Below, piece by piece: positions 6,571 through 38,240 of a stretch of 64,000 bases of DNA. The notes beneath the pieces were generated by a model, which ran no database searches, was not told the origin of the DNA, and saw only the letters and a list, made by a program, of their open reading frames with translations. The DNA is taken from NCBI GenBank assembly GCA_015680685.1, contig MNCI01000001.1, positions 440,524 through 504,523 of the forward strand, read 5' to 3'. Numbering within the stretch: the first letter of the stretch is position 1; each line of letters opens with the position of its first letter. The stretch comes from Gnetum montanum (lineage: Eukaryota > Plantae > Gnetophyta). Position numbers and translations under genes: made by a program.

Positions 6571-6574
6571 GAAG

Positions 6575-11800: not shown

Positions 11801-11914
11801 TAGGAATCATACTAACATTTCAAAAATTATGCATGACAAAAATGATGAATACAAACCTTGGGAAATACTTGAAAAACCATCATCATAACTATTGAATTAT
11901 TGCATGCATGAACN

Positions 11915-12589
11915 ATGTGAGTTTTGATTTTTCTTTCTTCAAGATTTGAGCATTATAAACTCTATCAATTCATCTCAATTGTGCCTATATTTCATGATTT
12001 TTGATGCTATACTCAATCTTCTATTATTCTAACCCTTAATTTGTAGTCTTGGGTTCATGGAAATGGCTAAATGAATCAAATTATTTTCCATAACTTATGA
12101 TGTCATCTAAGTTTTACTTATAAAGATCTTCTTGTCTTGATTCTCATACACCTTGTAAGGTCAATAAATGATGGTTTTGATGAGTGGTGGAGCTTGTACG
12201 TTACTTACACAATTACAAAAGATAAGTTGAGGCATTGTGGGTGAAGTTGGACATTTCTCCCTTGTTTGGGAAAGTGCATTGATGCACCCTTGGGTTTGTG
12301 TAGTGGAATTAACACCCTTGTTNTCAAAACCATCATTTATTGACCTTACAAGGTGTATGAGAATCAAGACAAGAAGATCTTTATAAGTAAAACTTAGATG
12401 ACATCATAAGTTATGGAAAATAATTTGATTCATTTAGCCATTTCCATGAACCCAAGACTACAAATTAAGGGTTAGAATAATAGAAGATTGAGTATAGCAT
12501 CAAAAATCATGAAATATAGGCACAATTGAGATGAATTGATAGAGTTTATAATGCTCAAATCTTGAAGAAAGAAAAATCAAAACTCACAT
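11915..12589. repeat. Perfect 266-bp inverted repeat (11915-12180 / 12324-12589), probable assembly artefact
   Basis: The arms are exact reverse complements and each begins immediately after a single n (11914, 12323). Confidence 0.85.
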
Positions 12590-15500
12590 AAGTGAAAGGC
12601 CAATCAAGTATTGTATGCAATGCAACCCTCATTGTCATTGGGAGATAAGGGTTGTCTCACTCACATATGATGCCAAGTCACTTAGGATTCATAGGTGGGT
12701 CCTTCCTAGAGTATGCACTTGTCTTCATTACCCTTGTGAATCCCATTAATAAAACACTTGTAGACTTTTAACAACTAGTATGAAATTAGTATCAAATGTT
12801 AGTTTGTCTCCTTGGATGACTAGGTCTCATTCTATGCTTTTCTCAATTAGCCTTATGCCAAATACAACCATGGATAATAATGAAATATGAAGGATGATGA
12901 AGGAATAATGGATGAGAGAGCGAAAGGAAAAGAGTGCAACATCACTAGATTCCTAGCCAATTATTCAATTAGTTCATGCAACATGTGAGCAAGTTCTATA
13001 TCCCATGAGAGATTTTCTCTCACATAATTTTACTATTACTTGTCCATACAATAGGGATTGGCCTCCAAGTCTCTATTCTAAGTGCAAGATCATACTAATC
13101 ACATCCAATGTAATCTAGCCTTGATTATTCTATGATCTAACCATTGATGTAGACCAAACCAAGGCAACATATAACCAAACATCTAGAAATTAAGATTCCA
13201 TTTTGGTTTTCCTTCATCCATGCACATAAGCATAGTAGGCTCCCCAAATTTTACTGTATTGGAAACCTCTCATCAATTTCCTTGGTTGCACTAATTGATC
13301 CCATACCCAAAAAAGAGCATAATACCATGAAAATCAAGAAAATATATTTTGGATTTAAATATAGTTTAGGATTAGGTCAAAGATGAGGATTTTAGACCCT
13401 TAGAAAAAATGATTAGGGGCTTTGGTAAAAGTAGCAATTGACATTACCAAGGTTTACAAACAAAGAGACTTCTAGGCCTTCATGGCCATGGTTTGGTATG
13501 AAATAACATTATGAGAAGATCACTTATTTTTGATTATTTCATAGGAAGAGGGCTTTTAATGTAGCATGGGAATCATTGAAATGATTGAAGTACTAGATTA
13601 CCACTTGGAGTCTTCAACTTGCATGAACATGAGAATTCATCCCCCACCACATTACTCGTATAGGTTCATGAAATCACAAATCTCTTCTAACCAAGATGGC
13701 TAGGTAAGGTACCATGTATACCTTGGTTCAATCACATTGATTAGACCCATCCACTAGTTATAAGAACCCTTAATGACATAAATATCTAGGATTTTTGAGC
13801 TCACACACTAAGATGTGGATCCATCACCTATCTACAATTCTAGTAGCCCTAGCATCAACAACTTGTAAGTTGAATTCTTGCTCTATACTAAATCTGGGCC
13901 TAGTTTAGTAGGGATGGATAGAATAAAAGTGTGTAGATGAATATTTTTACATGAGCATTCCATTGATCAAACCTTTACATTAGACCTATTTGGCACTTTT
14001 GTATCATCATTGCATCTGTAGCTCACCTATCCAACATTGGCTTACTGGATGAGCATTTGTAAAGCACTTTAGTTCGTTTTTCTCCACACACAAATAAAAG
14101 CACTCCAAAAGAAAATAAAATCTTATGAATGATTATTTTTTAAGCTCAATAAGTGAAAAATTTTAATTAAACATAATAATCTTTATTTATTGTAAAAAAT
14201 GAAATAGTAAAAAATAAAGTTTTAACATTGGGCAAAGGATCTCTCCCCCATGAATAATCCATGTCTATCACCCTCAAATCCTTTGAGTAGTAAATTGTTC
14301 ATTAAGCATGCTCAAAGGTGAAAGATGTTCATTATGGTACATCATGTATCACCCCACAAGTGTTCCATTTGGCTTGTTTGAATGGCTTATGGTCACGATG
14401 TAGTAGAATTGGAAAGGATCACAGGGTATTCTCTTGTAGTTCATCCTTATAGTCTCATTCCTTATACCAATCTCAAGGTTTAGATCTTAGAGAACCAACC
14501 TAGCATTTGTAATGCTCAACCAAGCTCTTTCCATTATAGCAAGAAGATCCTCTTCCACCTTATCTTTTGATTTGAGCACCAAGAAATTAGCAGCATATTA
14601 ACAACATATAACAAAATTTATTACATTACATACCTATCCCATGAGGTCTGTGTATAATTGGTCTACTACCTCTAACTAAATGTTGGTATGCTTGAGAGGA
14701 GGAAGCCTCCAACCAAGTTATTACTACAATGAGATGAGATTGACTTCTCTCGAGTCATAGAGAGCTAGATAATGATCCCTTTTACCAATTTAGATATCCA
14801 CCATGGGACTACTAGGATTTGGTTACTTTTCAACTAAACATCATTATTTAACTACATGTGTTGCCACCACTGATATAGAGATGGTGACAACATCACCATC
14901 TGGTACCATCATGCTATCTTCACTAGACATAGCAATGGAACTCATCTTGAAGTAGATATTATATTTGAATTATGATAAAGGATGTTCATTACCTCATGAG
15001 TATAAACTTGTATTTGAATTGAATGGTTTTTCTCTTTGTAATGTGAAGAGAAGGATACAAACCCAGTCTTATGATTCTCACATTTGCACTTATGATAAAA
15101 TTCCTATTGTGGGACCTCAAATGTTTTACTGTAACCAAATCAATAGATGACTGGTAATATTTTCTAAATGCATGGATAAATGAAGGATAATTATCATAGA
15201 GTATTTGTAGAGATTCTCACCATAAAAATAGAATGAGGAAGCCTCATTTGGATCTTCTTTAGTACATTTAGAGTAAGAGAGCTTCCCTTTACTCTTACCA
15301 TCATACCTCTTTTTGTGTTCTTCTGGTGTGATTGCTTTGATTATAGCTTCAACCACCTTCCTTGAGATTAGTGATCATCTTTTTATACATCACATCCTTG
15401 ACTTGATCCATGTGATGGGCCAAGTTTGTCAATGCTTTCCTCATTCTAATTTGATCTGATGCTAGAGTCTCAACTATAGTGATAGATTTAGTGGTACCTT

Positions 15501-16869
15501 CAACATTATTAGCCCTCTGTCTATATGATGGATCCTAATTGTACTCCTTGACTAATAGTAACTCTATTTCACAACTTGGTTAATCCTACTAGGCCTATAT
15601 TGGATGGTGAAATTAAAATCCTATAAAAGCCCTTCTTAATTTCTATGATTGTTTTAAATAATTACCTTCCATGATAGCAATGGTATTTAAGAGTGCTTTG
15701 ATTGGAACCATGGACTTCTTGTGCATCTAGCCCATGACGTACATGCCCATGCACTCTCTTGTTTTCAACTTTAGCCCTTCTACAATGTGCATCAATTGAT
15801 CTCTTTGGCTAAAATCATGGTTTAGACAATAGTGAGAAACTTTTAGGTACCTTTCCATGGTAATGTTCAGAGGCTCACAAGCTCCTTGCCTCCATCCAAT
15901 CATCTCCTTCCATATGTTTGAAATTTAGGCATACATATAAAATTTTTGGTAGAAAATTTTAATCATGTCAACCCATCTTTGAATCAATTGAGGAGGCAAG
16001 GATTTGTACCAAGTTTTTACATGTTTGACAAAGATGTGGGAAACAACCACAACTTTTACCAATCACTCATGATCCCTTGGAGATAATAAGAATTATTAAA
16101 TACTTGCACATAGAATTTGGAATCACTAGTATACCCTTTGTATGTTGGTTCATTTGATTTTATTGTCATGAAGATGCTTCCTCATAATATGTACAACTAT
16201 TAACTCATGGTAATCATCCCAGTATAACAAAGGAGAATCATCATTATCACTAGTAGGTCTAGACAAATGCAATGTTGAAACTTGAAAAGGAGATCATCAA
16301 AATGGAGTAAAGATACTTGACTAGGAGCCTTGATGGTAGGCTAGTCCTTTGCCTTTTTTATTTACTTTAACTTCTTACTACTCATAAAAATAATTAGATG
16401 AAATGTTGTGGCCACCTTCTTTTTCTACCATTTGATCTTAAGGATCTTGCATGTACAAAGGCTCATAATCATGGATCATGGGATCATGAACCTTGTATGC
16501 TATACGTTCATCCTCTAGCCTCATATTAATTAAGGCATTAATGGGATCAATTGGTGTAGCCACAATTATGCCTCTTGAAAATCAACCATGAGCATCTCTC
16601 TAGCTTCCTTACTTATTTAAATGATAAGCTAGCATAACTGGTGGAAGGGTCTTATCCTTTTAATGCTTGAAAGTAATGAAAGGCCTTTTTCTTTTTGGTG
16701 CATTACTAAAAATCTTCTATAGGCTTTTAGCACTATCTACCTTTTTGTTTGCATTCACAACCTACGCAACAACATTAAAACACACACTTAATTTGAATAA
16801 AATTTAAAATCAATAATGTACAAGTATTTTCAAATAATTCACCAATGCTCTTCCCAACAATGGTGCAAA

Positions 16870-18112
16870 TGATAGGGATCCCACTAGCTTTGGACTAATG
16901 GAATTTATCATACAAATCATAGTGTGATCTAGTCGTAAGCTTTGAGGATGATGTTGAGTGGATTACCAAGAACACTCACATATATCATTGCATTCAAGAA
17001 ATATAAAAAATATTATAATGTATATAATACAGTTATTACCCATGTTTCCATAGTAAGAGGTAGAGAAAATATTTATGATTTTATGTTTTATAATTTTTAT
17101 AGGTTTTATAATTATAAGAAACAAACAAATAATAATAAACACACACACACTACAATCCCACCTAGGGATAGGGGCAATTCTTGTATTGCAATCCCTCAAG
17201 GAATAGGTGCAACATGACACACACAAGTATAAATAAAATGGCTCTTAGTTATAACCTTGATGGCGCAAAACTATGTCATATGGTTGTGACCTCCTTGAAT
17301 AAGGTTTCATTGTTGTAGCTTATAAAAATTAGAAATGAATAAATATTTTTATGGTTTCAATGTTTTATAATTTTTTTGGTATTTTAATGTTTAAGACATC
17401 AACAATGCAAAAATGAGGAAAAACCATAAGCTTTATTCACTATGCAAATACTGGACTTTGCATCAACCAAGTGAATATTGGCTACATAGGCAAGAGAGCA
17501 CTCTGACAAAGCCTAGCCAGACATCTAAAAGAGGTGACTCAAAATACACACAAAATAGAGAAGGAATCACTTTCCCAATGGAGGAAGAACACTTCACATA
17601 AAACCAGATGCCAAAAAATAAAGGAAAATGCTTGAAATTAAGTTTTTTTTGTGTGAAGCTCATCTTGGGTATTTATAGTTTTCACAACACAATGGCAAGG
17701 GTTCACTAATGCCCAGGCATTAACAAAGTTCTATTAGTGCAACTAAGACTTTCCAAGACACATTAAAAGAGGCCAAGAGATAAATGTGGTCAAACCAAGG
17801 CACCAAGAGGAATGTGTTAATGCCCCTAAGCTAATGTAGGGGGTGCACATGCATAGGGAAGTTAGCACATCCATGCCTCCAACCCTTTATCTTCATTTTC
17901 CTAGATGAAAGCTAAGATGCCAAGGAACATGTCGAAACCTTCCAAGGATCTCCAGAAAAAGCCAAAAACTTCCTGAGAAGCTTGAAACATGCACCAAACT
18001 TACAAGTGTGAACTGAAAGCCTAGGATGCAAACCTAGGAGATAGAAACCTCAACCATACACTAAACCATAAACAGAGGTTACATGACATACATCCTAAAT
18101 CCAAGGCTTATA
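16870..18112 (-). repeat. 5' LTR of element B
   Basis: TGATAGGGATCC...GGCTTATA (terminal CA changed to TA), adjacent to the PBS. Roughly 80% identical to 7640-8882 by eye, mostly transitions. Confidence 0.88.
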
Positions 18113-18654
18113 ATTGAATTTTAAAATGCTACTAGATGACTCATCACTATTATTGTCAAAAATATTTTAGTTAAAAAAATTAAGAGCTTTAAAGTATGTT
18201 TTGATGGCTTCTTCATCTACACCATAATTTTAAAAAATGGGCTAGATGATTAGTATGAAAAACATTAAGAATATTCATATGTAAAGTGCAAGTATTTTCT
18301 TTAATAGAAGTGGCCTTAATTTGATGAGAAGAAGACTTACCTTTCAAGGAGTGGGAAAATTCTAGAGAAGTTTAATCTCCTATTCAAAGTTAAGACAAAG
18401 GGGCTTGGAGATGTGCACCTCTAATGTGATAATCCTATTTGTCTAAGTTTGTTGTTTGAAATTTCAAGGAGATCATAATTATTTTAAAAGCCAAGACCTT
18501 CATGAATCCATTTTTGGGTAAAAAAAATAACATCTAAGATTAAGTTTTTTTAATCTTTGAAAGTAAGTTTATGTTAGAGAGAACTCTATTTCCATAATGC
18601 TTTGAGAAATACTAAACATGATGAAAATTGTCATTGTACTAATTAATCTAACCA

Positions 18655-19005
18655 AAATTCTAGTAAGATTAAGAAAATAGAATTTCAAATTGGATCAGAA
18701 GATCATAGGAAGTTGTTGCTTAAGAAAGGCTATATTAAAGACAAATATTTGGAATGATAGACAAAAATATCTGGAATGATATGATTAATTGTAGTAAATT
18801 AAATTGAATCCACCAAGAAATACGAACTACCATAAAAAAAAATTCTAGTAAGGTTAAGAAATAAAATTTCAAATGGTGTAAAAAGATCGTATAGGAAGGA
18901 ATTGCGTAAGAAAGGCTATATTAAAGACAAAAATACCTGGAATGATATGATTAGTTTTAGTAAATTGAATGGAATCCACCAAGAAATACGACTACGATAG
19001 AAAAA
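18655..19005. repeat. Diverged tandem duplication (~185 bp period)
   Basis: aattctagtaag..taagaaaggctatattaaagacaaa..gaatccaccaagaaatacga occurs twice. Confidence 0.8.
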
Positions 19006-19109
19006 CGCTTATGAATAATCTAGTGCAACTATTCTGAATAATTTAGCTAATCTGCAACTGGAAAATTTTTACAATCTGAAACTCAACATTTATAGTATAT
19101 AAGTTCACA

Positions 19110-19390
19110 AATAGATGCTTCTTTATTATAAACCCTAGAGGTGGTGTTCATATTGACCCACCGTTCAATTGCCGTACATGTTGATCAAAGTATATTTCAT
19201 TAATAAAATATCATTTTGTGTTTTCCTTTTGCTTTTTCCAGAATCTTTCATTATAAACTCATCATTCATTCTATCTTTGTTTCTTAAAATTTTGTTGAGT
19301 AACAGGAATAGATGTTCTTTAATTATAAACCGTAGACGTGGATGTCCATCCTAACCAACCATTCAGTGCCTGTACATGTCAATCAAAATT
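19110..19390. repeat. Diverged ~80 bp direct repeat, ~198 bp apart
   Basis: atagatg.ttcttta.ttataaacc.taga.gtgg..gtacatgt..atcaaa at ~19110 and ~19308. Confidence 0.65.
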
Positions 19391-19459
19391 ATCTTGATGT
19401 TTTTTCTTTAAACCTTAACTTTACGTAAGTTTTAAAGGCCACAGGATTTATATCAATCC

Positions 19460-19597
19460 TGAACGGTATCAACGTGCAAAAATATCTATTTTATTTGAGA
19501 TTACTTGAACGGTATCAACATGCAAAAATATCAATTTTATTTGAGATTACCCGAGCGGTATCAACATGCAAAAATATCAATGTTATTTGAGAATACT
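19460..19597. repeat. 46-bp minisatellite, 3 copies, just upstream of the I-domain exon
   Basis: Unit TGAACGGTATCAACRTGCAAAAATATCWATTTTATTTGAGATTACY repeated three times. Confidence 0.9.
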
Positions 19598-19674
19598 TGA
19601 AGATAACATTTTGTTAAAAATTAGCCAGACTTTTAAGTATATTCATTTTAACTTATTTTCATGCTATACTGCAG

Positions 19675-19738
19675 GATAAACAGCATTCTGGAAAGATACA
19701 AAAGATGTTCTGTTCCTTATCTTGTAAATGATGCCCAG
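19675..19738 (+). CDS. MIKC-type MADS-box gene, I-domain exon (exon 2)
   Basis: Acceptor ctgcag| and donor CAG|gtaagt. 64 nt, phase 2 to 0, encoding (x)INSILERYKRCSVPYLVNDAQ. ILERY in this phase is the hallmark of the exon following the MADS box. Confidence 0.8.
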
Positions 19739-20085
19739 GTAAGTAATAAATTTCAATAAGCTCCAATGGGTAATAATATTTAAATTTTTGCATTGCTTCC
19801 ATTTTTATTATTTTGAAACTGATTCTTTCCCAGAGATCTTTACGATTCCATGGTGTTTGCAGGTTCGTTTTCATTCATTCTGATTTCCAAATAAGTAAAG
19901 ACAATTCATAATAATTAAATTTTTTATACAACCAAACCTAACTGCGAAACTCCGTAAAGCTCACGTAAATTATCGGAAACACAAAGCGTAGCCGTAAAAT
20001 ACATGTTGCCTAAGCTATAAAAATCCGTCGAATATTTTATCCAAGTTAGACACTCGTAGAATGGCAGGGAATTGGACTAGATTAT

Positions 20086-20203
20086 CCCTCGCCCATTTAT
20101 GGGCCTAACCCATAACCATTACAAACCATTACTGCTTTAGAAGGCCCTCGCCCATTTATGGGCTAACCCATAACCATTACAAACCATTACTGCTTTAGAA
20201 GGC
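20086..20203. promoter_or_regulatory. 59-bp tandem duplication with two perfect CArG boxes (20093-20102, 20152-20161)
   Basis: CCATTTATGG matches CC(A/T)6GG in each unit. It sits in the near-palindrome GCCCATTTATGGGC, which also contains TGGGCY site-II motifs. The repeat is directly visible; function is inferred. Confidence 0.6.
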
Positions 20204-21254
20204 TAAAGATAGCCTTAGAGCATCCAATTTCCGACTTTGTGGACATTGTTGTTTACCATTTTCCGCTAGAGATGATATTAATAAAATAAGATCTAAAGGG
20301 AATAAAATTAGTTTAGGATAACTTGGTGGGAAATAAAGCAATAACAGATAATTTTAGAAGTAAAATGACAAAATCCGCTCATTAAGCGTTGACATGTTTA
20401 AATAAAGTAATGTAATACCGAAAATATTTAATAATTAAATAAATTTATTTATGTCTAGCTATACTACTATTACTGTGTTACAAATACACAGAAAAAATTA
20501 AAGTATTTAATTTTATTTATGCTAAAACATTGAGATCCTGGGATCGGTAGGCCAGGATATCATAAATTTTTTAGATATGTTAATTTTTAAAGAAGATATT
20601 TAAGAAAAAGTTTGGGAGTTAAAACATAGATTTAATTTAATATTTAATTTTTATAAGCTTAGAAATATTCTTTAGTACTAGTTAGTCCTTCCATGCCTAG
20701 ACTATTAACATTAAGCTAACACCTTATTAATAATATTATTTAAGATACAATAATAAATTACTTTAAATTTATATTTACTTTGATTTAATGATTGATTTGG
20801 CTGGTTAGACAATAAAAGTGGAATTTGGTATAGAGATAAGGTTATATAAGCCTACGCTTAGATGTTATTTTATAACAAGAAATGATAACCTCTCTACAAA
20901 CAATTTGGCTACTTAGTTTTAATGCTTCAATCATATGATAAAATTGATAAAGATATAAAAAATAGAATTAAAGTAGAATGATCAAATGAAGATAGACTTA
21001 GTGACATCTAATGCAATAACTCAATTCTAATAAAACTGAAGGGAAAATCTTTCAAGAGAGTAATCAAGCCTACTATATAAAAGAGGCATGAACATTAAAT
21101 TATGAAAGCAGAAATGTGAATACTTAATTAAATAGCTATTTAATATTAGAAGAAGAAATAAATTGCAAAATGCATATATTAGGGAAAGTCTTAGTGTAGT
21201 TTCTATTTGAGATAAGCTACAAGAATGATATCTTAGATGATGTAGTTGTGTACA

Positions 21255-21475
21255 AAAAAGATAGATAATGAACCTATCAAAAAAAGGTTGTATTAGTATT
21301 CCAAGAAAGCCACCAAAAGAAAATAAAAATAAAATGGAAAAATTAATTGAAGATAATATGAAGAAATTGCAAGAAAATAAGGATCTACTTCTTCATAGAG
21401 ATAAGGCTAGGATGACGATGATGATGGTGATGAAAAATAAAAAATGATAACATCAATCAAACTTTACAATTTTAA
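21255..21475. repeat. Dispersed repeat remnant, homologous to 6575-6860
   Basis: See 6575-6860. Confidence 0.5.
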
Positions 21476-21759
21476 GTATTGATATTATATAATAAATTAT
21501 CCTTTGCCTCCTAGTCAAATAAATCTTCTTAACCTCATTTAACATCATTATATATGATAGGAATAAATGATAATTACATTCAATATTATAAAATTATAAT
21601 TTTATTTGAACGTTAACTCAGTTACATTATTATTTTTCCACTAAACATTAATTTCATAATCATTAATAATACATGTAATGACTCTATCCTTATTTTGATA
21701 TCATAATATGAGTGCACAAATACAAAAATGTCATTTTCTTAGTTATGAGAAAAAGCTAG

Positions 21760-23460
21760 TTTTAAAGTGGCCGCGGAACTTCAAGATACTAATCAATAGA
21801 AAGAAAAATTTCAAAAAATTTTGCACCAAACAAGGAATCTTTCATCAAACCACTTGTGCTTACAATTCACAAACTAAAGGAATAGACAAAAGGAAAAAAT
21901 AGAAGTCTTCAAGACATGATGAGATGTCTTGTTAACAATGCATACCTCTCAAATGGATAATGGAGTATGGCCATAACCATGGCTACATACATTACAAAAG
22001 AGTCATCAGTAGCAAAAATAAGAATAGATCCCCATATGAATTACTATACAACAAAGTTTCTAACCTTGTTGACATGAAGAGATTTGTTTATTATTATTAT
22101 GTCAAGACTCCAAAGCAACTTCTAGAAAAATTAGATTATAAAGGAAGAAAATGCATATTCATTAGCTATTACTCAAAGACCTCAACATACAGATGTTATG
22201 ACCCAAAAGAACATAAGTAATACTCAAGTGATGCTATTTTCCTTGCAAAAAATTTTGAAAAAATTTATTTTCAATAAGAAAATAAAAAATAGACAATCAA
22301 CTTTTCCCAAAATCATGGATTCAAAGGGACCATTCTTCAACACAAATGTTAGATACAAATTTTGAAAGGAAGAAAATAAGATCCAATATCATTACTAACA
22401 TGGCATATTTAGTTCCCACTCAAGAACTAAAGCATATTCGAGAAGCCTTAAAAATTAAAGCATGAAAAGAAGTCATGTATAGTGAATACAAAGATATCAT
22501 GCAAAAATAAGATATTGAAATTAGTTAATAAACCAAAAGATAAAGAAAGCAATAGATTATAAATGACTGTATAAAATCAAATTCAATTGAAATTGATAAA
22601 TAATCAACCACTAGGTAAAGCTTATGGCAAGAGGCTTCAAATAAAAGGAACATATTAACTATGAGGAGATAGTTTCTCTAGTGGCAAGATTTATAACAAT
22701 TAAACTGATTCTTTCCATTTCTGTCCATCATGTTCTCAAACTCTATCAAATGAACATAAACTCAACTTTTCTTAATGGCATCATTAATGAAGAGGTCTGT
22801 TTCTACCAAATAGAAGGATATATCATCAAACCAAACGAAGAAAGATTTTTCAAAATAAACAAAGCCATGAATGGACTAAAGCAAGTTTTTATAGAATGGT
22901 TTTAGAGAATCAATAACTACTTGCTAATAAAAAGATATTCATCTTGCATGTTTAAACTCACATTGCACTATAAGCATAGTAATAAGAAATTCATCATAAT
23001 CTTACTATGTGAATAATCTTATAGTTACAACAACAAATAATAATTTAATAGAAGAATTCAAACTAGACATGAAGAGTAAATTTGAAATGAAAGATTTAAA
23101 AGAATTGAAGTTTTTCTTAAAATGCAAGTTAATCATAAAAAGGAGGAAATTAAAGTTCATCAAACCAAATATGCTTTCGCCATTCTAGAAAAATATAAAA
23201 TTATCAAAGATAAAGCTATCCTAAAACTAGAACATAAGGACAACACCATTCTTGTAAATGAAACTCTATATAAAAGCATGATTAAAGCTTTCATATTTCT
23301 TTATTACATAAGACCAAATCTTGAATTTGCTATGTCTTACTTATTATAATATATGCAAGAACCAAGACAGTCCCACCTTAATGCTCTCAGTATATTTTAA
23401 GATATGTAAAATGCCTACCACACTTGTGAATTAAGTAAAGTCAAATTAATGCCTACCAAC
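21760..23460 (+). mobile_element. Ty1/copia internal fragment (integrase then RT)
   Basis: FKKFCTKQGIFHQTTCAYNSQTKG; SPYELLY..KLDYKGRKCIFISY..YRCYDP; LYQMNINSTFLNGIINEEV; RPNLEFAMSYL. IN-before-RT order. Confidence 0.9.
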
Positions 23461-24099
23461 TTGTGAATACCCAACCTTCATTTCTCCAATCTCTATAAAT
23501 ATTCTACTAATTTAACATATGTAGACTTCTTTCTCCTTTCAATGACAACAAAAATCCCTCTCTAATCTTTCTAATAGCTTTTGGTGCTTTATAATAGGAG
23601 AAAATAAGTAGAAAAAGAGTAACTAATCTTTCTTTCTTAAAACTAATAGTTACTATCTACATCCTAACTTTAACTGAAAGGTTATTAATTTTTTTCTATT
23701 CTGGAAAAATAAATTGTAACTAATGATGAATCTAGTATGATTGAAAACATCTTGCAGAGAAAACAAATGCAAACTATGGATGATATAGAGTAAAGATTTG
23801 ATTTAATAAGCTAAATATTTGACACATTTTCTTTGCTACATTTTTTAAAAAGAAAAGTTTAATCTATAAAATGAGCATGAATAAAATTTATTAATTCTAA
23901 AAACTAGAAAATGGAAATTTTTATTACATCTAGAAAATCATAAAGGATTTATTAGATAGCTACAAAGCTTGAACACATTTTTAAAAGAAAATTGAAAACA
24001 TCATTAATTTAATACCCTAATGAAATAATGTTAATTTTGAAGAAAACAATCAACACATTTTAGTTTATATTATAATTCATTTGAATATAAGCTAAAGAT

Positions 24100-24960
24100 A
24101 AGAAAAATAACAAGGCATGTTCTTCATCCTCAATGCCTTATTTGCATAGTCTACAATATGCTTTTCTCGTAGTACATTGACCTAAAAACCTTTCTTAATA
24201 AGGAGATAATGAGAGCTCATTCTTTCTCTAGCAACTTGATTCCTAGAATACATATTTTCTGGTGATTCAAATATTGGCTTGATTCCTAGAATATGAACCA
24301 TTTCATTTTACCATATAAATAAGTACCTAAACCTTCCATAGTCATAACATAAAAGAAGTCATAACATAAAAGAAGAGGAAATATAGCATCGCCTCGCCTT
24401 ACACTATGAGCTATGTGAAAGTTACTTTTATAAGCACCATTGATAGGGATGGAGAATTTTGTTCCTTTATAGCATTGACTAATCTTAGGTCTCTCGTAGA
24501 AAGGGAATTTAAACTTTTCCAAAATAGTATCCATGTACTTTCAATTTATACAATCATAAACCTTACTATTATTTAACTTAAGGGCAATTGGTTCTTTCTG
24601 AAGGGATGTTGACTGAAAAATTTCCTGGATAAAAAAACCCGATTAAGAATGAATCTTCCTTTTACAAAACCAACTTGATTTTCTTTGACCAGAGTTGTTA
24701 TGATCGGCTGCGATCTTAACATAATGAATCTTGCAATGATTTTATTCAGTGGAGTAAACATTGACGGGTGAAAAATCTGTAACGTTTAAAGTTGTCTCTC
24801 TTTGAAAGGGATTAGAAAGGACAATCCCAGTAACATTATATTCACCCAAGGTGTTATTCACCCAAGGTGTTATCCTTACTGCTAGATTTTATAAATCATG
24901 TCGAATACATCTTTGCCAAGTATACTCCAATACTTTTCAAAAGTCATCTATTTCGCCTTT
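24100..24960 (-). mobile_element. L1-type LINE reverse-transcriptase fragment
   Basis: KIIARFIMLRSQPIITTLVKENQVGFVKGRFI and FSIPING..SVRRGDAIFPLL (ORFs 24573-24761, 24286-24534). Confidence 0.85.
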
Positions 24961-25015
24961 AGATCTTGTTAAATGGCACGCTGAAAACTACCTATTTAAT
25001 CTGTTATGCCTGTCA

Positions 25016-25150
25016 TTAAGATGGTTTAATGTAATCCATTGTTAAATGCTTTGATATATCTAGTTCGGCTTTATATCTGGTTAAATTGCCCTCATGGGTT
25101 AATGGATTAAGATGGGTTAATGTAATCCATTGTTAAATGATTTGATATAC
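25016..25150. repeat. ~45-bp direct repeat, 2 copies
   Basis: ttaagatgg.ttaatgtaatccattgttaaatg.tttgatata at ~25016 and ~25107. Confidence 0.8.
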
Positions 25151-26619
25151 AATTATGAATTTGTCACCTCTTGATTACTTGCACCTATTCCTTTCCACTG
25201 CTTGTATTGAAAAGATAATTTGAACACTATGGTTTTAATCCTGCTTGCATAGATCTTGTGCAATAATTATTATTCAAGTTAAGAGGAAATTCAAATTAGT
25301 ATGGTCATGAGGGTTGGTGAATTGTATCTTAGGCCTTTATTTAATTAGTAGGAAAAGAACTAGTTACAGTTATCATTATTAAAACTATCTATACACATAC
25401 TTCTTGGCTTCTTGCTGACTTTGACTAACTTATCTAGTATGCAGTCATCAGGATTTTTCGTTAAAATCGGTTGCGTTTCGTTGCCTTTGGCTGCCGTTGT
25501 GTATGTCTTCATCTTTTGGTATTCTCACTTTTTAAAGCATCTTTATTTCCCATTTTATCACATCTTGAAATAGAATTCCATTATCCAATGGTACAAGAAT
25601 TGACAGATTGGCCTTCTGCAAGTAATCATATTTCTTCAACATCTGCTAAGTGTTGCATCATATCAGACGTCTTAATCCATATCTTCTATCCTGGTATCTT
25701 GTAGCTTCTTCTCTCAATCATTTTGAGACCTATTATAGATGTCCTACATAAAATGTTGCACCATTGATTAATAAAGATGATTTTGTCTTATAGCTCATTG
25801 ATGTCGTGAATTACCTGTGCACGTTCACCGTCGTTGAGAGTAGCATCAACTGCATTCATTCTATTAAAACGACAGGATCATGCTTGAAGATATTAATTAA
25901 TCTGTTGGCAAATTCTTTATGCTCCTTTTAGAAGGCTTCTTTAGCGTTCTTACACATGGCACAATAGTCTTTCTGAAAGCTTCCTGCATGGGCGCACATG
26001 GCAGTCATGCAGATTTTAGCTATGCTTCACAAGTTTTGAAATCCCAAGTGTAGAAGCATAGGAATCGTGATTTATAAAATTTTAAATCCTGACGTATCGT
26101 TGCAAAACTTTTTTCAGAAATTGCAACAGAATCGTAGTAACGAAAACTATAATTATAAATTTCTTTCTTAAAGTTTTCAGCAATGGAACACATCGTAGCC
26201 AACTGAAAATTTTATATTTTAGTAGCATGTGTTTCTTTTAATTTCTTAATTTTCTCCAAGTTGAACTCTTGCTTCAGTTTTTAAGACATCGATTGTAATA
26301 GTGGTCGCTGTTGCAGAGAACTGGGCCCTTTAAATCGTTTAACTGTTGTATTTTGTGTTTTGCCCGGATCTTTTGTTAAATATTAGTTTTATTGAATATC
26401 TTGAAAAAACTGGAATATTTAAAAGAAAATGGATGTTAAATATTGGTAATTGTTAAAGTTCTTTATGATGACTTTGGAAAAATCTAAAAGAGTTTTGAAG
26501 GGTTAGGTTCTTCTTTTGAAAGCTTTAATTCTAGTAGGAAATGCTAAGTTATAAATTTCTAGTTAAACTATATATCAGGGGTCTCAATATATTACCATTA
26601 TTTTGGGTTCCTACAACCC

Positions 26620-27205
26620 ATAAAACATATTTAAAGATAATCCAAGAAAAGATAGAGACCTTGTGAGATATAATCAAGTAAATTTCAAAATAGTTTGCTT
26701 ATTATGCAAGCATCCACATGTATTTATTGTAATAAATATTAATGGAATTACATTGCTTTTGGGTTTAGCAAGGCCTTGGGAGTCACTTTCTTTTCTATTT
26801 TTTTTTTATCACAATGTCTTTTGATGTATGGTTAATATTTTACCTAAGTTGAAATGTAGTAAAACTTGGACATTAGAAAAAACAAGAATGTCTATAAATA
26901 ATGGATGATAAATACTTGTAGTTGTTAAAGCTCTTAAAGATGAGTTTGAAAAGATTGAAAAGAATTTAAAGAATTTTGTATGTTAAAAACATTTCTAAAG
27001 ATAATCCAAAAAAAGATGTATAAACCATGGCATATTATTAAGGAAATTTTAAAATAGCTTGCTTATTATGCAAGTATCCACATGTATTTATTTGATGAAG
27101 ATTAATAGAATTGTATTACCTTATCCTTTGCCATGGTTTGGGAAGGGCTTGGAAGTCACGTTTTTTTATGTTCTCTTTTATCATAATAGCTTTTTATATG
27201 TGGTT
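26620..27205. repeat. Diverged ~215-bp direct repeat (26620-26835 / 26985-27205)
   Basis: taaagataatccaa..aaaatag.ttgcttattatgcaag.atccacatgtatttatt..gtcac occurs in both copies. Confidence 0.8.
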
Positions 27206-27376
27206 NAAATTTATACATAATATTTTTTAAACATTTTGATCATTAGAACCTTATACATCATTAAGTATAGCATGTCTTAAAGTAATTATATGAATTGTTT
27301 CATCTTCAAGATTAATCCCAATGATAATGTTAATTAGTCACTGTCCTTACATATTTTTTATGTTTAATGTTTGCAG

Positions 27377-27441
27377 GAAAGTCAACAAGTAAAGTTATCA
27401 AAACTTCATGCAAAACTCATGGTTTTAGAAAAATCAATAAG
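27377..27441 (+). CDS. MIKC-type MADS-box gene, first K-box exon (K1 helix)
   Basis: Acceptor tttgcag| and donor AAG|gtaaca. 65 nt, phase 0 to 2, encoding ESQQVKLSKLHAKLMVLEKSI(R). Matches the K1 pattern (KL+AK+..LEKS.R) in length, phase and split Arg codon, and is in frame with 19675-19738. Confidence 0.8.
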
Positions 27442-28299
27442 GTAACAATTATTTTGATTATAATATATCTTATTTTAAAATGATCAATTTTTCAAAAAAA
27501 AAAAATTAATTTTATAAGTCACAATTAGACTACTTATATTAATTCAAAAGTAAAATCAAAGAATGTACAAATAATCCATAAGAAAATAATCTAGAAAAAT
27601 GAATCAAGTAGTTTTAACATGATTTTTACTTTCTCTTTGGAAAATTCTATGTAATCACACTTTTCAACTTAGAATAATCTACCATAATAAAAGAAAAAAA
27701 ATACTAATACAAACTATAACAATATGCCCAAAGAAGATCTTGATACTTATTAAATATGTGTAGGCTAAAACAAGTTACAACTATATTAATGACAATCCAA
27801 ATCTACAAGACATTAAGAGAGAGTTAACCATATGCAATAACAGAGGCAAAAACCATACAAACTATAAGGTAGAAGCATCTAAAAAAATTCAATAAGTCAA
27901 ACCATATAAGTTAGTATAACATATTATCATGGAACTAAGAGGGAGAATCCAACGACATAGAAGTTGGATTGACTAGGTCATTTTTTAAGTAATAGCTGTA
28001 ATATTACTTATTTATGTTATAGGTATATATATGTATGCTTGAATCTAGAAATGAATCTTTCTTGATCATTGGCTATAATAATGTTAGAAAATAATCATTA
28101 GCATGAAGCAATCAATACTAGTCCCACAACCAAATATTAGTTCTAAGTATCGAGGACAAATGAGGTGGAAGTTTGAAGTAAGAGACTATTTCTACCTTTA
28201 CATATTGTCTCTTCTCTATTGAGTGCTTAGTATCTAAGGTGTTAACAAGTAGACTTTTTCATCTAGAATTATAAAAGATTATTAAGTTTGTAAGTATGG

Positions 28300-29900
28300 T
28301 TCATGAACTAGTTGGAGTGATGAGCGTAGTAGGGATAAAAGCCTTATACATTATACATCTTTATAATAGTTTTTTCCTTAAGATATTAGAATATATTTGT
28401 AAGAATATGTATAATTATTATTTTTAATAAATATTTACTATATATTTATGATGATTTAGAAAAGATAAGTATCATTAAGTCAAGAAAAAGAAGAATATTT
28501 ATGTTATGAATAAGAAAGTAAGAAAGTATGAAATAATAGATAAACCATGCATAAGCATAAGAAAATTAATGAAGTGATAACATGAGGAAATTATAAGATT
28601 GAAGAAATATATTATATAAAAAAGAGAAAGGTAGTAATATGAAATAGTGGAGAAACCTATAAATTACCTCATGAGATTCAAACATTCCATGAGAAATACA
28701 AAGTAAAGTTAGAAGATACCAATGCAAGTTTGTAAAGTATTGGTAAAGATTTCATAAAGTTTAAAACATGATTACAAGTATAAACTTAAAAACCTATGAT
28801 ACCATAGATTCCTACTGTCTAAATGGAGCACAAAGCACTTGAACATGATAGTGAAGAAAGTAATTACTATCAATCATTTAGCATTCAAAAATGAAAAATG
28901 AATTTATGAAGGTAAAGCATAGATAGATAAAGTACAAGTTCTATATCATAAACATGAAAAGTTCAACAAAGATAAAAGTATATACGTAAGAACCTATTAA
29001 CTTGATGAGATTTTGCATAAGGAGGTTAATCTAAGAAAATGAAATGGATACCTAGCTTACGTTAGATTAACCAAAGGCAAATTTAAGCTATATAGTAGAA
29101 TAGTCAAGTGCGTACAACAAAATCAAGAAACATTCTCACTTAGTATACTTTTGTAACACATTAAGAAAATATTGTTATATCAAGATATGTAGAAAATCAA
29201 AATTTTAAATTAAGCATAGTAAACATGGATAATAGTTGAAGATTATTATAAAAATATATGATAAACCTAAAATTGGTTATCATCTACATTATAATCATAT
29301 ATTGATGATTAGTTAGTTATAAAATATTGAATCCACTTAGATATCCTAGTGAAAATATAAAAGTTTATAAGTTAGAGAACATACATAACTAAGAATTTTT
29401 ATGGATAATAAATACTTATTAAATGCATAAGAATTAAAATTTTTTAATTTAAAGCTATCTAGGAGACATAGAAAAAACTCTAACATAGTATTGGAGTAAT
29501 GTTGAAGTCAAGTTAAAGCCATGCTCAAGGAGTATAATGATGAAAAGAAAATTGACTCTATTATTAAGGTTAAACTAAGAAGCTTATAAAAATGTTACAT
29601 ATAAGAATATATATGAATTTTAATATGAAAAAACTTGAGGGATGTGAAGCATCATCAAAGGAAATGATACTCAAATAGAAATCACAAGTTGTAAAGGCCA
29701 AAAGATATAATGATTCGAAATAAAGATCCTTTTTAAACAATAATGAAAATTTAGAAGGTGTAATTACTAGAAGATGCATTAGTTTGAAATGAATAACATG
29801 GAAAGACTTGATATTTATTATTTAATTATTATACATTAAATGGATTTACAAGGGATATGAAGGAGGTCAGTCTAGAATAAGTAATAAATTAACAACAATC
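28300..29900 (+). mobile_element. Highly decayed copia (SIRE-like) gag/protease remnant
   Basis: A-rich decayed coding strand with LDEILHKEVN (~29001) resembling the LDEIL..GLGY region of copia gag. Weak signal. Confidence 0.4.
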
Positions 29901-32900
29901 TGCACCAATTTTCTATTCATTAAGATACATACTAGAAAAGAAGTTTTAGTCATTGAATGTTGTTGAGGCTAGAAAATTTTATGTATTTGATATGATGTAT
30001 GGAATATTTTTATAATGGAAGAACAATTTAGAAAGATAAAAATTAAGTAATTGATGAATTACTTGGATGTTTTAGAAACTTGAAATATCAAAGGAGATTC
30101 CTTGATCTCTAGGATGTTGATATATGTTTACATGTAGTTCTTTGCAATGTTATTATTTTACTTAGTTGAAGTTATCATTAGGTAAATAAGTTGGGGGTTG
30201 ATTACCACTATGTTATTGTTGACTTCCATGTTCTTCCATTTAATCGTCCTTATCCAACCCAAGTATTATCATTAATGTCATCCTTATGCATTATGCATCA
30301 TTATGGAGGTATGTTCACTTTTAGTTTGGCATATATATGCTTTTAAAGGTGTTCATTCCTTCTTGAATAAATTAGATAGTGTAATCTTACAAGATTGTAT
30401 ACTACTTGTCCTATTCTATCTTGAAATGTTTGGACCTTGCTCAAGAAGACTTTGCCAATGGAATCCTTTTTGTTATTTAATGTATTTTCAAAGATTCAAA
30501 TTTTTATTTAGACTTTTATGATGTGATATGGTAATTACATATGCATCAATTTGTTTTATTGATGTTTTATGATCCAACCTAACTAGCCATAATAGCATGC
30601 ATCTCAAAGGGGATATATTATAATAGGATGTTACATCTCCTTTCCAAAGAACATAATAATTCATAACAAGCAAAGAAGTATAGGTCATACTCTTTTTTTT
30701 TCACTTTTTTCATAAGTTATTTTTCAAGTATATATTTTGGTGCATTTTTATTCTATTCCCTACAAATCATATGCATGAATTTCATTTGACATCCTCTAAG
30801 TGAACATGAATACTAGTAGAAGACATTTGATATAATTTTAGCTACAAAGGCCCATGGCTCTAGAGTTTTAGTATAAGAATAAAATTTTTTATTTTCTACA
30901 TAATATAAGTCTCTATTTAGAAATCAACAAACCATATGCCTTTGATCATCATGATGTATTCTAGTAGTAGGCTGGGAAGATCTAAGATGATCTTTAGCTA
31001 CACCATAATGATGATGTTTTTAATAATAAATACCTTTCCCAAATATTTGTTGAGAATTTATTAACTATACCTCTTTTCTTGGATCATTGATCATACCATC
31101 AATTTTTTGGCTTCTTTGCCAATGCCTAGTTCATGTTGATAGGCAAACTCACTATGATTAGTAGAGAAGCTTGCGTGTTAAACATTAATGTAAACTTACA
31201 TTACTTAGCCATTAACCATGGTAGTTATTGTGTACTAATGGAAGGTAGGAAAACATTATAATCTTTAAATATTATTATAATAAAATTTTTCCCATCCTTC
31301 ATTAGAAGAAGCTACATGTTATGATAATCAAATTTACAATAACCTCAAATTGATTTGGGTAAAACGATATTATTATATATTATGTAACGTTATATCATTG
31401 TCTAGCACACTAGCACTTATTCACTATTCTTAGTGATATTGTTGAGTGCGTGTGACTCATTAACAATATCTTCTAGATGATAAAAAAAATGAAAAATGTA
31501 AGGCCATAGAGTTATCTTGTTAGTACTGGTTTAAGTTTTTAATCATTTTCTAATAGGTTAGAAAAGTTGTGAGAAATAGTATAAATGTATAGTTTCCTAA
31601 CTACATGAATGTTTTATTTATGGTGAGTAGAGTAGGATTAGATAGTATTAGATTTGATGTTATAAAAGCTTGATTCTTCATCAAGGATAGTCCCTAGATG
31701 ATATTTCTAAAATTTACATTTTTGAGAAAAAATTTTTTGATCACAAATCAAGGTTGATTCATGGTGGCCTAATCATAGGTTATCATGGCCTCATGGTACT
31801 TGATCATGGGTTATTATTAGGTCATGATTAATGTTACTATTTAAATGAATTAATCATTAGTGATAGCTTCCTTGTGCTTTGCCTCACTGCAAGTCATGAT
31901 GAGATTGTGGTGCCTAACAATGGATTGTGGTCAAGGCATAGTAGCCTTTGAAACAATTGATGAGTTACCTTCTACATATGTGTTGATTTCAAGTAGACCA
32001 TGAACCATGGAAAGCCCATGGTTTGGAATATCATGGTCCATTGTTTGATCATGTTGGCTAAGAAACTCTCAAAATAAAAGTCATTTATTTCTAGATATTC
32101 CATGAATTTACCATCAGTCCTATTAATGCTTTGGGCTAACCACATGTTGTAGTTAGATCATGGTTTTGTCACAAAAGATACTCAAGAGAAAAAACATGAA
32201 ATCTAAAGTCATTATAGCCCAATTTAGGGCATGTAAAGCTTAGAAATAATTTCTAATACCTTTTTATTCATTAGCATGGGATAAAATTATGATTTAAACA
32301 TGATTAATAGGCATATAACTTGAATTTTGAGGGGCAAATAGAATTCAACATGAATGGGTAGCTTAGCTTAAATTTTGGACAATAAATTAGCCACATAAAT
32401 GTACAAAAAGTGCTAAAAATATATATCATAACATGAAAGGATTCTCTTGAACTCTCTTAAAGATCACTTTCATAGAGTTTAACATCAAAATTTACATGCC
32501 CTTTGACTCATGAATGAGAGATTTGAATAAACATGAAAATGTCCATGCTTAGACAAAAATTATAAACTAAAATAAGGATAAATTTATGAGCATGATGACA
32601 TCAATTAAGAAGAGGCTTGAATCTCTTGAAACCTTCCATTATACATGATAATTAAAGAATTAAAATAGAGGCATTGAGATGGCCTCTTCTCTTCAACTAA
32701 AATTTATCTCTTAATGATGCTGAAAATATCCATAAAGAGACCATATAAACTTTAAGATGTTAAAATTTCTGCTGATACATCATGTGGAGGAATAACCATA
32801 AATAATATTAAAATTAAATATATTTCAATTCAATATATATGAACATGAATTTCTACAAACATTAAAAATTACAACATTCATATTAAAGCTTCAACTAAAA

Positions 32901-35023
32901 AACATGTGCATGAAACATAAATNAACATTTATTTGGCTTTCTAGCCTTCTCTTGGTACATAACTTAAAAACATAAAAGGACAAACATCTAAATGATAATG
33001 AAGGGATGGAATGATAACAAAAAAAAAGGTTTGATGTTTTCCAAAATCATTATATTTGGTAGTATTTACATTCATGTTTGAAGACTTGGTTTAATGTATT
33101 AGGTATTATAAGTATCTTTTTTGTTTGAAGAAAAGAATCAAGAAAATGTTAGGTTAAGAGAAAATATTCAAAAAAGCAAAGAATAAGATAAAATCCTTCA
33201 TGTTGAACCTATGAAAAAATGAGGCAAGTTCCTCCACAAATAAGGATAAGTAGAAGTATACCCCTCCCATTCTAACTTGCCAAGCTTCTTGAGACATTGA
33301 ATAAAATATTATTTTCCTACTTTTATTTCTCTTACATTGAGTATGTGAGTTGGGTGTTTAGCTTGAATCTCTCTTAGCTTTAATCATTCTTTTTCCTTCT
33401 CTCATTCTTTCATGATGCTTTTTATAGCTTGATGTATGAATCCCTCTTTCATGAATTCTTCTCTCAATTTCCTTCAAGCCACAATTACATGAACTCTCTT
33501 AATTTTTTGCATTCTTCTAAGTTTCTTACATAGTTCTTTCATTTTTTAAGTTCTCTTAAATTCTAAACCCAATTACATGTTTTAGCATATTTCACTTCAT
33601 GAATTGAAGTAGTACGAAGTTGATTTATGTTTAGATTTAAAGGATTTACTTCCATGCTTCTAATTCAAGCCATTTCCCTTTGATTTACATGTTCATGTTC
33701 ATGTTAAAGAAAGGTTTCAACACCCATCATCTTAATTTCATGTTGTAAGCTTATATTTATTGATGCCTGAGTTTTGTCCAAGTGCTAAATATTGAGAATA
33801 TGTTTTCTAATGTTTTAATCTTAGATTCATGATGTTTTTTATGTCAATAGAAAAGGTTAAAAGTATTTTGCATGAATTCCAAGTTTCGTATGCATGTTAT
33901 ATAAATTTAAGAGAATTGTTAAAGATTTTATGTTTTCTTTTTACTAGTTACATCCATTGACATGTCTAGATGCCTAGCATGATGTTTTGAGTTATACTTG
34001 CAAGCCTAGAGTTGTTTTCAAAAATTAACTTTCATCTAAATTATTCATAGTAACTATTTTTCTATTTTTTGTAGTAACACCTCACTACAACTCAGGTTGA
34101 GTATTTTCTGAAATTTGTATAGATCAAAACTTATGATTAACTCAATCATGATTATCCAATGATTGAGAAGTCTAAAGTACAAGGGATTTAAAATGGCCAT
34201 CACAACTTGACCATGATGCATTATCAACTTTTGATATACTAAACTTATTTTTCACTATTATTATAGGACCACAACCCATGATCTATTTTCCATGAGAAAA
34301 CCATAACTCTTGGTGAAATAACATGATTTGATCATGGCTCATAATATCAAGAAAAATCCATCACATTTACCTTTACTACTCATGTTTGATTTAGAAGTAG
34401 ATAGTAGAGATCTTATACCACTATGCAAGCCTAATAATTGGCATCAAATTAGAGGAGTTTTAAAAGTGAAAAAAATATGGTCACAAAAGATATTCTAAGA
34501 TATAGTATGATCTTCAATGACTTCTAAGATTTTTTCTATTGGTCTCATCTTGTAGAGTTTCTCTTACAAGGTAATGAAGTACGGTCATATGTTAACAGTG
34601 GTGTAATTCCTTAACATATGAATGCCCAAACCAAAAAATAGAAGGAAATTATCTTAATATATGGAGTAATATGCTCTTACTAAAATGATCATTTATGATA
34701 GGTATAGTGAGGTCATTAGTGCTAACATTGTAATTAAGAATACATCAAAAAAATATTGGAAAACTCTTCAAGAACGGTAAAATGATAATAAAGCTAATAG
34801 AAAGATAAAGGAGTTCAAAGAGAGGATTGAATGTGAGAACATAAGAGTCTTAAAGGATGAGCCACTAGGCCACTTTCTTGAGAGGCTTACATTATGTCAT
34901 AGGAACATAGAGAAGCATAATTGTAATTACTACATGAAGAAAAAGATAAAAAAGTAATGACCATGTTGTATGATGATTACAAACTCTTAAATATCATTGA
35001 GAACATAGTATATATATATATAT

Positions 35024-35940: not shown

Positions 35941-36111
35941 TACCCCCATGACTGAATAAAAACTCATCCTCAAGTTACAAGGAGAACAAGCTTCATTGAT
36001 TACACAGTGGATAGGTATGGGATTATTAACTGGAAAAACAAAAAATGAAATGATGCAGCAGTGTGGGAAGACACAACACAGAAAAAATACTACAACTACA
36101 AAAAATGGAAC

Positions 36112-38185: not shown

Positions 38186-38240
38186 CCTATTTATAGGGAA
38201 ATAGGACGTGATATCGCGTACGGTACATCGCGTCCCCAGT
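38186..38240 (-). promoter_or_regulatory. Putative internal promoter for the extra ORF
   Basis: CCTATAAATAGG (38186-38197) is preceded on the minus strand by GCGATATCAC/GCGATGTAC motifs, the same arrangement as in the LTR. Confidence 0.55.

What the first reader, a model, noticed from the sequence alone, without database searches (positions are those of the whole stretch)
19675..27441. Hidden MIKC MADS-box gene: two tiny exons in 64 kb of retroelements
Seen: two plus-strand exons with strong canonical splice sites (64 nt, phase 2-0; 65 nt, phase 0-2) splice in frame to INSILERYKRCSVPYLVNDAQ-ESQQVKLSKLHAKLMVLEKSIR. Known: this is the size, phase and motif pattern of the I and K1 exons of MIKCc genes. 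Inference: I found no MADS exon in the 19.6 kb upstream and no K2 exon in the 36.5 kb downstream. If intact, the gene has introns of >19.6 kb, 7.6 kb and >36.5 kb packed with TEs and a virus, and would probably be missed or fragmented by annotation.
Basis: partly seen in the sequence, partly recalled or inferred. Interest (0 to 1): 0.85.

Follow-up and report, generated by a model that had tools for sequence, protein, structure and literature searches.

The report
Two MADS-box exons amid transposons
Two tiny, well-spliced exons 7.6 kb apart in transposon-rich plant DNA are almost certainly the second and third coding exons of a MIKC-type MADS-box regulator gene. Such giant-intron genes are already known in large plant genomes, and I could not show that this one is whole or expressed.

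Summary
Plus-strand exons at 19675-19738 (64 nt) and 27377-27441 (65 nt) exist and read as stated.

- **Splice signature.** They are the only two places on either strand matching TGCAG|G, 56-66 nt, AG|GTAA. Chance expects 0.05, and none of 100 shuffles gave two.
- **Motif match.** A published I-region motif has its best six-frame match in the first exon. A published K1 motif has its best match in the second.
- **Structure.** Lengths and phases (1+63, 63+2) fit canonical MIKC exons 2 and 3. The K1 peptide has a clean 3-4-3-4 hydrophobic heptad.

I put the chance that these are MADS-box-derived exons at about 0.9.

Whether the gene is intact is open. The window holds no MADS exon and no K2 exon. 

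Unchecked scan notes place a MADS exon about 55 kb upstream of the window and a 100-nt K-box exon about 41 kb beyond it, in the right order. That would give introns of about 75, 7.6 and 78 kb. The scan also noted a similar long-intron MIKC gene on another piece of this genome. I rate this a new member of a known kind, of modest interest.

The parts
19675..19738 (+). Exon I (intervening region), 64 nt = 1 + 63, phase 2 to 0. It encodes (x)INSILERYKRCSVPYLVNDAQ. Acceptor tactgcag|G, donor CAG|gtaagt.
   Evidence: Best six-frame match in the window to the published I-region MEME motif (score 31, rank 1). The generic ERY motif matches only here.
27377..27441 (+). Exon K1 (start of the K domain), 65 nt = 63 + 2, phase 0 to 2. 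It encodes ESQQVKLSKLHAKLMVLEKSI plus a split AG codon. Acceptor T-rich tract plus tttgcag|G, donor AAG|gtaaca.
   Evidence: Best six-frame match to the published sunflower K1 motif (score 36, rank 1; SKLHAKLMVLEKSIR against SKLKAKIEVLQRNQR, 8 of 15 identical, ending exactly at the exon end). Hydrophobic residues at positions 7, 10, 14, 17 and 21 give a 3-4-3-4 heptad.
19739..27376 (+). Intron between the two exons, 7,638 nt, 25-33% GC. It is inflated by a decayed copia-type retroelement in sense orientation (about 21.7-23.35 kb) and holds local tandem duplications.
   Evidence: Pfam SH3_retrovirus at 21960-22217. RVT_2 at 22681-22902 and 23009-23185. Repeats.
1..19674 (+). At least 19.6 kb of the upstream intron; no MADS exon here. 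It contains an LTR-like repeat pair at 7640-8825 and 16870-18058 (77-84% identity, about 9.2 kb apart) and a 46-nt x3 tandem repeat at 19458-19601, ending 73 nt before exon I.
27442..64000 (+). At least 36.5 kb of the downstream intron; no K2-like exon here. It contains an LTR pair at 35426 and 41704 (92%) with a gag on the minus strand, and an LTR-like pair at 53046 and 57751 (76-81%).

Best explanation
The two intervals are real exons: exon 2 (I region) and exon 3 (first K-domain helix, K1) of a plus-strand MIKC-type MADS-box transcription-factor gene. Transposon insertions have blown up its introns. Most likely the gene is still whole. Its MADS exon would lie tens of kb upstream of the window and its 100-nt K2 exon tens of kb downstream, giving a primary transcript of more than 160 kb. 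The 64- and 65-nt exons would be recognised through unusually strong, near-identical splice signals (TGCAG|G ... AG|GTAA). The encoded segment is the part of a MIKC protein that sets dimer choice: the I region, then an amphipathic 3-4-3-4 heptad helix. Shown: the exons, their splice signals, phases and sizes, motif matches, and transposon content of the middle intron. Inferred: linkage to flanking exons, transcription, splicing, and function. My odds: about 0.9 that these are MADS-box-derived exons, and about 0.5-0.55 that they belong to an intact, expressed giant-intron gene.
For: The splice-only pattern hits exactly these two intervals in 128 kb of both strands (expected 0.05), and the perfect 9-mer donor occurs once. 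Only 4 consensus-bounded open intervals exist in the window. Published MEME motifs served as a-priori probes (PMC10261973 motif 3 for the I region; PMC11225715 motif 4 for K1). Each has its top six-frame local match inside the corresponding exon, in the open frame and in the right order. My generic I and K1 regexes match once each, at the exons; shuffles expect 0.26 and 0.017 per window, and both occurred together in 1 of 1181 shuffles. Lengths and phases (64 = 1+63, 65 = 63+2) equal those of canonical MIKC exons 2 and 3, which are 67 and 62 nt after a 188-191-nt exon 1 and before a 100-nt exon 4 in spinach AP3 and PI. The exon-bearing segments are single-copy in the window and have no terminal repeats that would suggest transposon capture. 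The intron sits at the canonical position, so this is not a retrocopy. Leads only, not support: scan notes s1-829030 (a 302-nt MADS exon about 55 kb before the window) and s1-825461 (a 100-nt K-box exon about 41.4 kb beyond it), in the expected order.
Against: There is no formal homology hit. Pfam on each exon was blank at E up to 10. PDB phmmer was blank. phmmer of the 35-aa stop-free piece against 1.84 billion proteins gave only a repeat-protein artefact. The Atlas gave no usable hit. As window-wide maxima the motif scores are not significant on their own: 21% and 68% of shuffles reach them. The significance comes from their coincidence with the splice-defined exons. No MADS, K2, K3 or C exon is in the window. 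The neighbouring-window note calls the MADS exon 'atypical, with substitutions at conserved positions', which could indicate decay. Several residues here depart from common consensus (LEKSIR against LQR.QR).
Confidence: 0.52

Rival explanations
1. Relic fragment: the two exons come from a MIKC MADS-box gene, but the locus is a dead or partial copy. This could be a segmental duplicate or a gene broken by transposon insertions, no longer making a full MADS protein.
For: No other exon of the gene lies within 64 kb. The surroundings are decayed retroelements with LTR pairs only 76-92% identical. There is no expression evidence. 129 nt of open frame is short enough to survive by luck. The neighbouring note describes an atypical MADS exon (unchecked).
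Against: Both exons keep full extended splice consensus on both sides, the only two such intervals in the window. They also keep open frames and the canonical phases. The transposons around them have lost nearly all ORFs. Candidate flanking exons of canonical size are noted in the expected order (unchecked).
Confidence: 0.35
2. Real exons of some other (non-MADS) gene encoding a coiled-coil segment, with the MADS resemblance coincidental.
For: The splice evidence is independent of any MADS reading. No HMM or BLAST hit ties the peptides to MADS proteins. Heptad helices are common.
Against: The top window-wide matches of two independent published MIKC motifs fall in these exons, in the right order. 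The ILERY motif followed by ..AQ at the exon end, the SKL.AK...L....R motif ending exactly at the split codon, and the 1+63 / 63+2 phase pattern all match MIKC exons 2 and 3.
Confidence: 0.08
3. Chance: two splice-like open intervals in AT-rich repeat DNA with no biological meaning.
For: Each peptide is only 21 aa, and the motif scores alone are within the range of shuffled windows.
Against: The expected count of the splice pattern is 0.05 against 2 observed. My rough estimate of the joint coincidence with the two motif maxima, the strand, the order and the phases is below 1e-6. This is an inference, and part of the pattern choice was post hoc.
Confidence: 0.02

Closest known systems
MIKC(c)-type MADS-box genes (canonical exon 2 = I region, exon 3 = K1)
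   Same: Exon order, intron phases, near-canonical exon sizes (64 and 65 nt against 67 and 62 nt in spinach AP3 and PI, PMC2923521), the ILERY I-region motif, the K1 motif SKL.AK...L....R, and heptad spacing. The K1 peptide matches best the sunflower consensus WTQEYSKLKAKIEVLQRNQRH (PMC11225715). From my own knowledge that consensus is typical of AP1/SEP/AGL6-like proteins.
   Different: The MADS domain and K2/K3/C exons were not seen here. Exon sizes are shifted by -3 and +3 nt. Some substitutions are unusual (KRCSVPY, LEKSIR). The clade is unresolved: ERYKR and ..DAQ followed by ..QQ also recall AGAMOUS-like genes (own knowledge, untested).
Ultra-long-intron genes of giant or transposon-rich plant genomes (Pinus tabuliformis, Sapria himalayana, Nigella damascena, Lilium)
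   Same: Small conserved exons are separated by transposon-filled introns of tens of kb. PMC10246380 reports 23 Sapria genes with introns over 100 kb and cites ultra-long introns in 74 P. tabuliformis MADS-box genes, 51 of them highly expressed. PMC13507195 reports 4194 Nigella genes with at least 10 kb of intronic transposon sequence and transposon-dense introns in AP3-1, AG1 and SEP2.
   Different: The species of this window is unknown to me. The intron lengths beyond the window (about 75 and 78 kb) rest on unchecked notes. Expression was not shown.

Membership tests
MIKC-type MADS-box gene | MADS (SRF-TF, PF00319) domain encoded by the first coding exon | tested here: not met
   No MADS-box motif in any of six frames of the 64-kb window. 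A candidate lies outside the window according to unchecked note s1-829030. So the feature is absent from the window, but not shown to be absent from the gene.
MIKC-type MADS-box gene | K-box (PF01486) profile match | tested here: inconclusive
   hmmscan of each 21-aa exon gave no family at E up to 10, but the queries are too short for the filters. The joined peptide was not searched, by instruction.
MIKC-type MADS-box gene | Conserved exon-intron structure: exon 2 in phase 2 to 0 (about 64-80 nt), exon 3 in phase 0 to 2 (62-65 nt), followed by a 100-nt exon | tested here: met
   64 = 1+63 and 65 = 63+2, compared with spinach AP3 and PI exons of 188-191, 67, 62, 100, 42 or 30, and 45 nt. The 100-nt exon was not seen in the window.
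MIKC-type MADS-box gene | I-region and K1 sequence motifs (..ILERY..; ..KL.AK.E.LQ...R with a/d heptad) | tested here: met
   Published MEME motifs have their best six-frame matches in the two exons. Each regex matches uniquely. Heptad at L7, L10, L14, L17 and I21. The scores alone are not window-significant.
MIKC-type MADS-box gene | Transcribed and spliced into one mRNA with MADS, I, K and C regions | not testable with these tools
Ultra-long-intron plant gene | Introns of tens of kb made mostly of transposons | tested here: inconclusive
   The middle intron is 7,638 nt and holds a copia remnant. The flanking introns are at least 19.6 and at least 36.5 kb if the gene continues, and contain LTR pairs and a gag. 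Their true ends lie outside the window.

The most novel reading that the evidence does not exclude
An intact, expressed MIKC MADS-box gene spread over more than 160 kb, with consecutive introns of about 75, 7.6 and 78 kb. Its 64- and 65-nt exons would be found by the spliceosome through matched, maximal-strength splice signals. Its introns would host retroelements and endogenous viral DNA that could feed back on its regulation.
Probability: 0.45. Interest if true: 0.4.

Novelty: new member of a known kind. Interest (0 to 1): 0.3.

Why it matters
If the gene is intact, it is one more example of how developmental regulators stay functional when transposons inflate their introns a hundredfold. 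It is also a practical warning that exon-poor windows in giant plant genomes can hide key genes from annotation. The matched extended splice signals on both micro-exons give a simple search rule, which in this window found exactly the two exons and nothing else. The phenomenon itself (MADS-box genes with ultra-long introns) is already described in pine, Sapria, Nigella and lily, so it would not change current views.

Tried and rejected
**Searches that gave nothing**
- Pfam on each exon was blank.
- PDB phmmer on each exon was blank.
- phmmer of the 35-aa stop-free piece around exon I against 1.84 billion representatives gave one hit, P0001. It is a 709-aa tandem-repeat protein whose seven weak repeats add up, with no MADS or K-box domain. 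I rejected it as an artefact.
- The ESM Atlas gave no usable hit.
- The search for homologous proteins refuses queries under 40 aa, so exon-wise searching there is impossible.

**Reads**

**Attempts to identify the genome or walk to flanking exons**
- Ten window ORFs are not in the protein collection.
- A gag ORF has no homologue at E up to 1e-5.
- A full-text search for the peptides found no paper.
- The Sapria paper's supplements do not contain them. Sapria is only a guess prompted by low GC and long introns.

**Tests that failed or were rejected**
- Forced full-length ungapped motif scanning failed because the motifs run across exon borders. I replaced it with local scoring.
- CArG boxes are not enriched: 9 against 7.35 expected.
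- Transposon capture of the exons is rejected: no terminal repeats, the segments are single-copy, and the intron sits at the canonical position.
Full report
**Observation**

The two plus-strand intervals exist exactly as described.
- Exon I (19675-19738, 64 nt) is bounded by ...tactgcag|G and CAG|gtaagt. After a leading G that completes a split codon, it reads INSILERYKRCSVPYLVNDAQ.
- Exon K1 (27377-27441, 65 nt) follows a T-rich tract and tttgcag|G and ends AAG|gtaaca. It reads ESQQVKLSKLHAKLMVLEKSI plus two bases (AG) of a split codon.
- Exon I ends in phase 0 and K1 starts in phase 0, so they join in frame by arithmetic. All searches were exon by exon, by reference.

**Are these real exons?**

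I ran a test that knows nothing about MADS genes. The pattern TGCAGG, 56-66 bases, AGGTAA occurs exactly twice in the window on both strands, at these two intervals. Chance expects 0.05, and none of 100 shuffles gave two.

The full donor consensus CAGGTAAGT occurs once, at exon I. It finds four intervals in 128 kb, and two are these.

The exon-bearing segments are single-copy in the window. They have no flanking terminal repeats, so nothing suggests capture by a transposon. Because an intron sits between them, they are not a retrocopy.

**Are they MADS-box exons?**

Formal homology tools cannot see 21-aa queries.
- Pfam was blank at E up to 10.
- PDB phmmer was blank.
- The 35-aa stop-free piece around exon I, run against 1.84 billion proteins, returned only P0001. 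That is a tandem-repeat protein whose seven weak repeat matches sum to a false E-value, and it carries no MADS or K-box domain.
- The ESM Atlas gave nothing usable.
- The search for homologous proteins needs at least 40 aa.

I therefore used independent published probes. These are MEME consensus motifs printed in two MADS-box family papers: PMC10261973 motif 3 for the I region and PMC11225715 motif 4 for K1. I scored them by local ungapped BLOSUM62 against all six frames.
- The I motif has its best match in the window inside exon I (ILERY core).
- The K1 motif has its best match inside exon K1. SKLHAKLMVLEKSIR aligns with SKLKAKIEVLQRNQR at 8 of 15 identities, and the match ends exactly at the exon's split codon.
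- A second K1 motif, from Hypericum, ranks the exon fourth.

The scores alone are not significant as window-wide maxima. 21% and 68% of shuffled windows reach them. What is significant is that the two maxima fall in the two splice-defined intervals, in the open frame, on the same strand and in the order I then K1.

Other lines agree.
- My own generic regexes for the two regions match once each, at the exons. Shuffles expect 0.26 and 0.017 per window, and both occurred together in 1 of 1181 shuffles.
- The K1 peptide has hydrophobic residues at positions 7, 10, 14, 17 and 21, a clean 3-4-3-4 heptad.
- Lengths and phases (64 = 1+63; 65 = 63+2) are those of canonical MIKC exons 2 and 3. Spinach AP3 and PI have exons of 188-191, 67, 62, 100, 42 or 30, and 45 nt (PMC2923521). 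That gives the same phases, with sizes differing by one codex each way (-3 and +3 nt).

I put the probability that these are MADS-box-derived exons at about 0.9. The clade is open. The K1 match is to a consensus that, from my own knowledge, is typical of AP1/SEP/AGL6-like proteins. ERYKR and ..DAQ followed by ..QQ also recall AGAMOUS-like genes.

**Surroundings**

- No MADS-box motif occurs in any frame of the window. No K2-like exon of 91-109 nt or K2/K3 motif occurs either.
- The 7,638-nt intron between the exons holds a decayed copia-type element in sense orientation. Its integrase SH3-like domain is at 21960-22217, and RVT_2 is at 22681-23185.
- Upstream lies an LTR-like repeat pair at 7640-8825 and 16870-18058, 77-84% identical.
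- Downstream lie a pair at 35426 and 41704 (92%) with a gag on the minus strand, and a pair at 53046 and 57751, 76-81% identical.
- Most other stop-free pieces have no Pfam hit. Five of those blank pieces lie in the stretch the scan called an endogenous caulimovirid. I did not pursue that separate finding.

**Intact gene or relic?**

The scan's own notes are unchecked, and I treat them as leads only. They place a 302-nt 'atypical MIKC MADS' exon 55,069 bases before the window start. They place a 'lone intact' 100-nt K-box exon 41,417 bases beyond its end. The order and the 100-nt size are what an intact plus-strand gene would need. Its introns would then be about 75, 7.6 and 78 kb. I could verify neither strand, phase nor sequence.

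The points in favour of intactness:
- Both micro-exons keep full extended splice consensus and open frames.
- The surrounding transposons have lost nearly all reading frames.

The points against:
- 129 nt can stay open by luck.
- The neighbouring note speaks of substitutions at conserved MADS positions.

My odds are about 0.5-0.55 for an intact, expressed giant-intron gene and about 0.35 for a relic fragment. I give about 0.08 to exons of another gene and about 0.02 to chance.

**Mechanism (best reading)**

This would be a MIKC transcription-factor gene whose primary transcript spans more than 160 kb. The two small exons would be recognised by exon definition through maximal-strength, nearly identical splice signals. 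They encode the I region and the first amphipathic K helix, the segment that governs dimer choice in MIKC proteins (established knowledge of the family). Only the DNA features are shown. Transcription, splicing and function are inferred.

**Comparison and novelty**

MADS-box and other genes with ultra-long, transposon-filled introns are documented.
- PMC10246380 reports 23 Sapria genes with introns over 100 kb. It cites ultra-long introns in 74 Pinus tabuliformis MADS-box genes, most of them well expressed.
- PMC13507195 reports 4194 Nigella genes with at least 10 kb of intronic transposon sequence, and transposon-dense introns in floral MADS genes.
- The scan also noted a similar long-intron MIKC gene on another piece of this same genome (s1-819417, unchecked).

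This is therefore a new member of a known kind. Its interest is mainly for annotation.

**Not done, and why**

- The joined-peptide search was left out by instruction.
- Species identification failed.

Noticed in passing
window 20086-20203: The 'duplicated perfect CArG pair' (CCATTTATGG at 20093 and 20152) is simply a 59-nt tandem duplication, 98% identical. CArG boxes are not enriched in the window: 9 found against 7.35 expected, and 34 of 100 shuffles reach 9.
   Followed up: partly
window 19458-19601: A 46-nt unit repeated three times head to tail (88% identity), ending 73 nt upstream of exon I. A 166-186-nt tandem duplication lies at 18654-19005.
   Followed up: no
window 21699-23346 (+): A decayed copia-type element in the same orientation as the gene, with an integrase SH3-like domain and two RVT_2 pieces broken by stops and frameshifts. 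No LTRs were detectable, so its ends are undefined.
   Followed up: partly
window 35426-42003: The youngest element in the window. Its LTR pair is 92% identical and about 6.3 kb apart. A gag (PF03732) lies on the minus strand at 40395-40943, and a 324-N assembly gap at 41380-41703 sits just before the second LTR. The gag has no homologue at E up to 1e-5 in the 5.8-billion protein set.
   Followed up: partly
window 60519-63998: Five stop-free pieces of 72-120 aa in the stretch that another note calls an endogenous caulimovirid gave no Pfam family at E up to 0.01. That reading is unconfirmed by this simple test.
   Followed up: partly
window 11914, 12323, 27206, 32923, 39349, 56083: Isolated single N bases are scattered through the window, besides the one 324-N gap. 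One of them (27206) lies 171 nt upstream of exon K1.
   Followed up: no
P0001 (library protein, not in the window): A 709-aa protein made of about 12 near-identical 55-aa repeats. It gave a spurious E = 1.6e-8 to a 35-aa query by summing seven weak repeat matches, which is a caution for short-query HMMER searches.
   Followed up: yes
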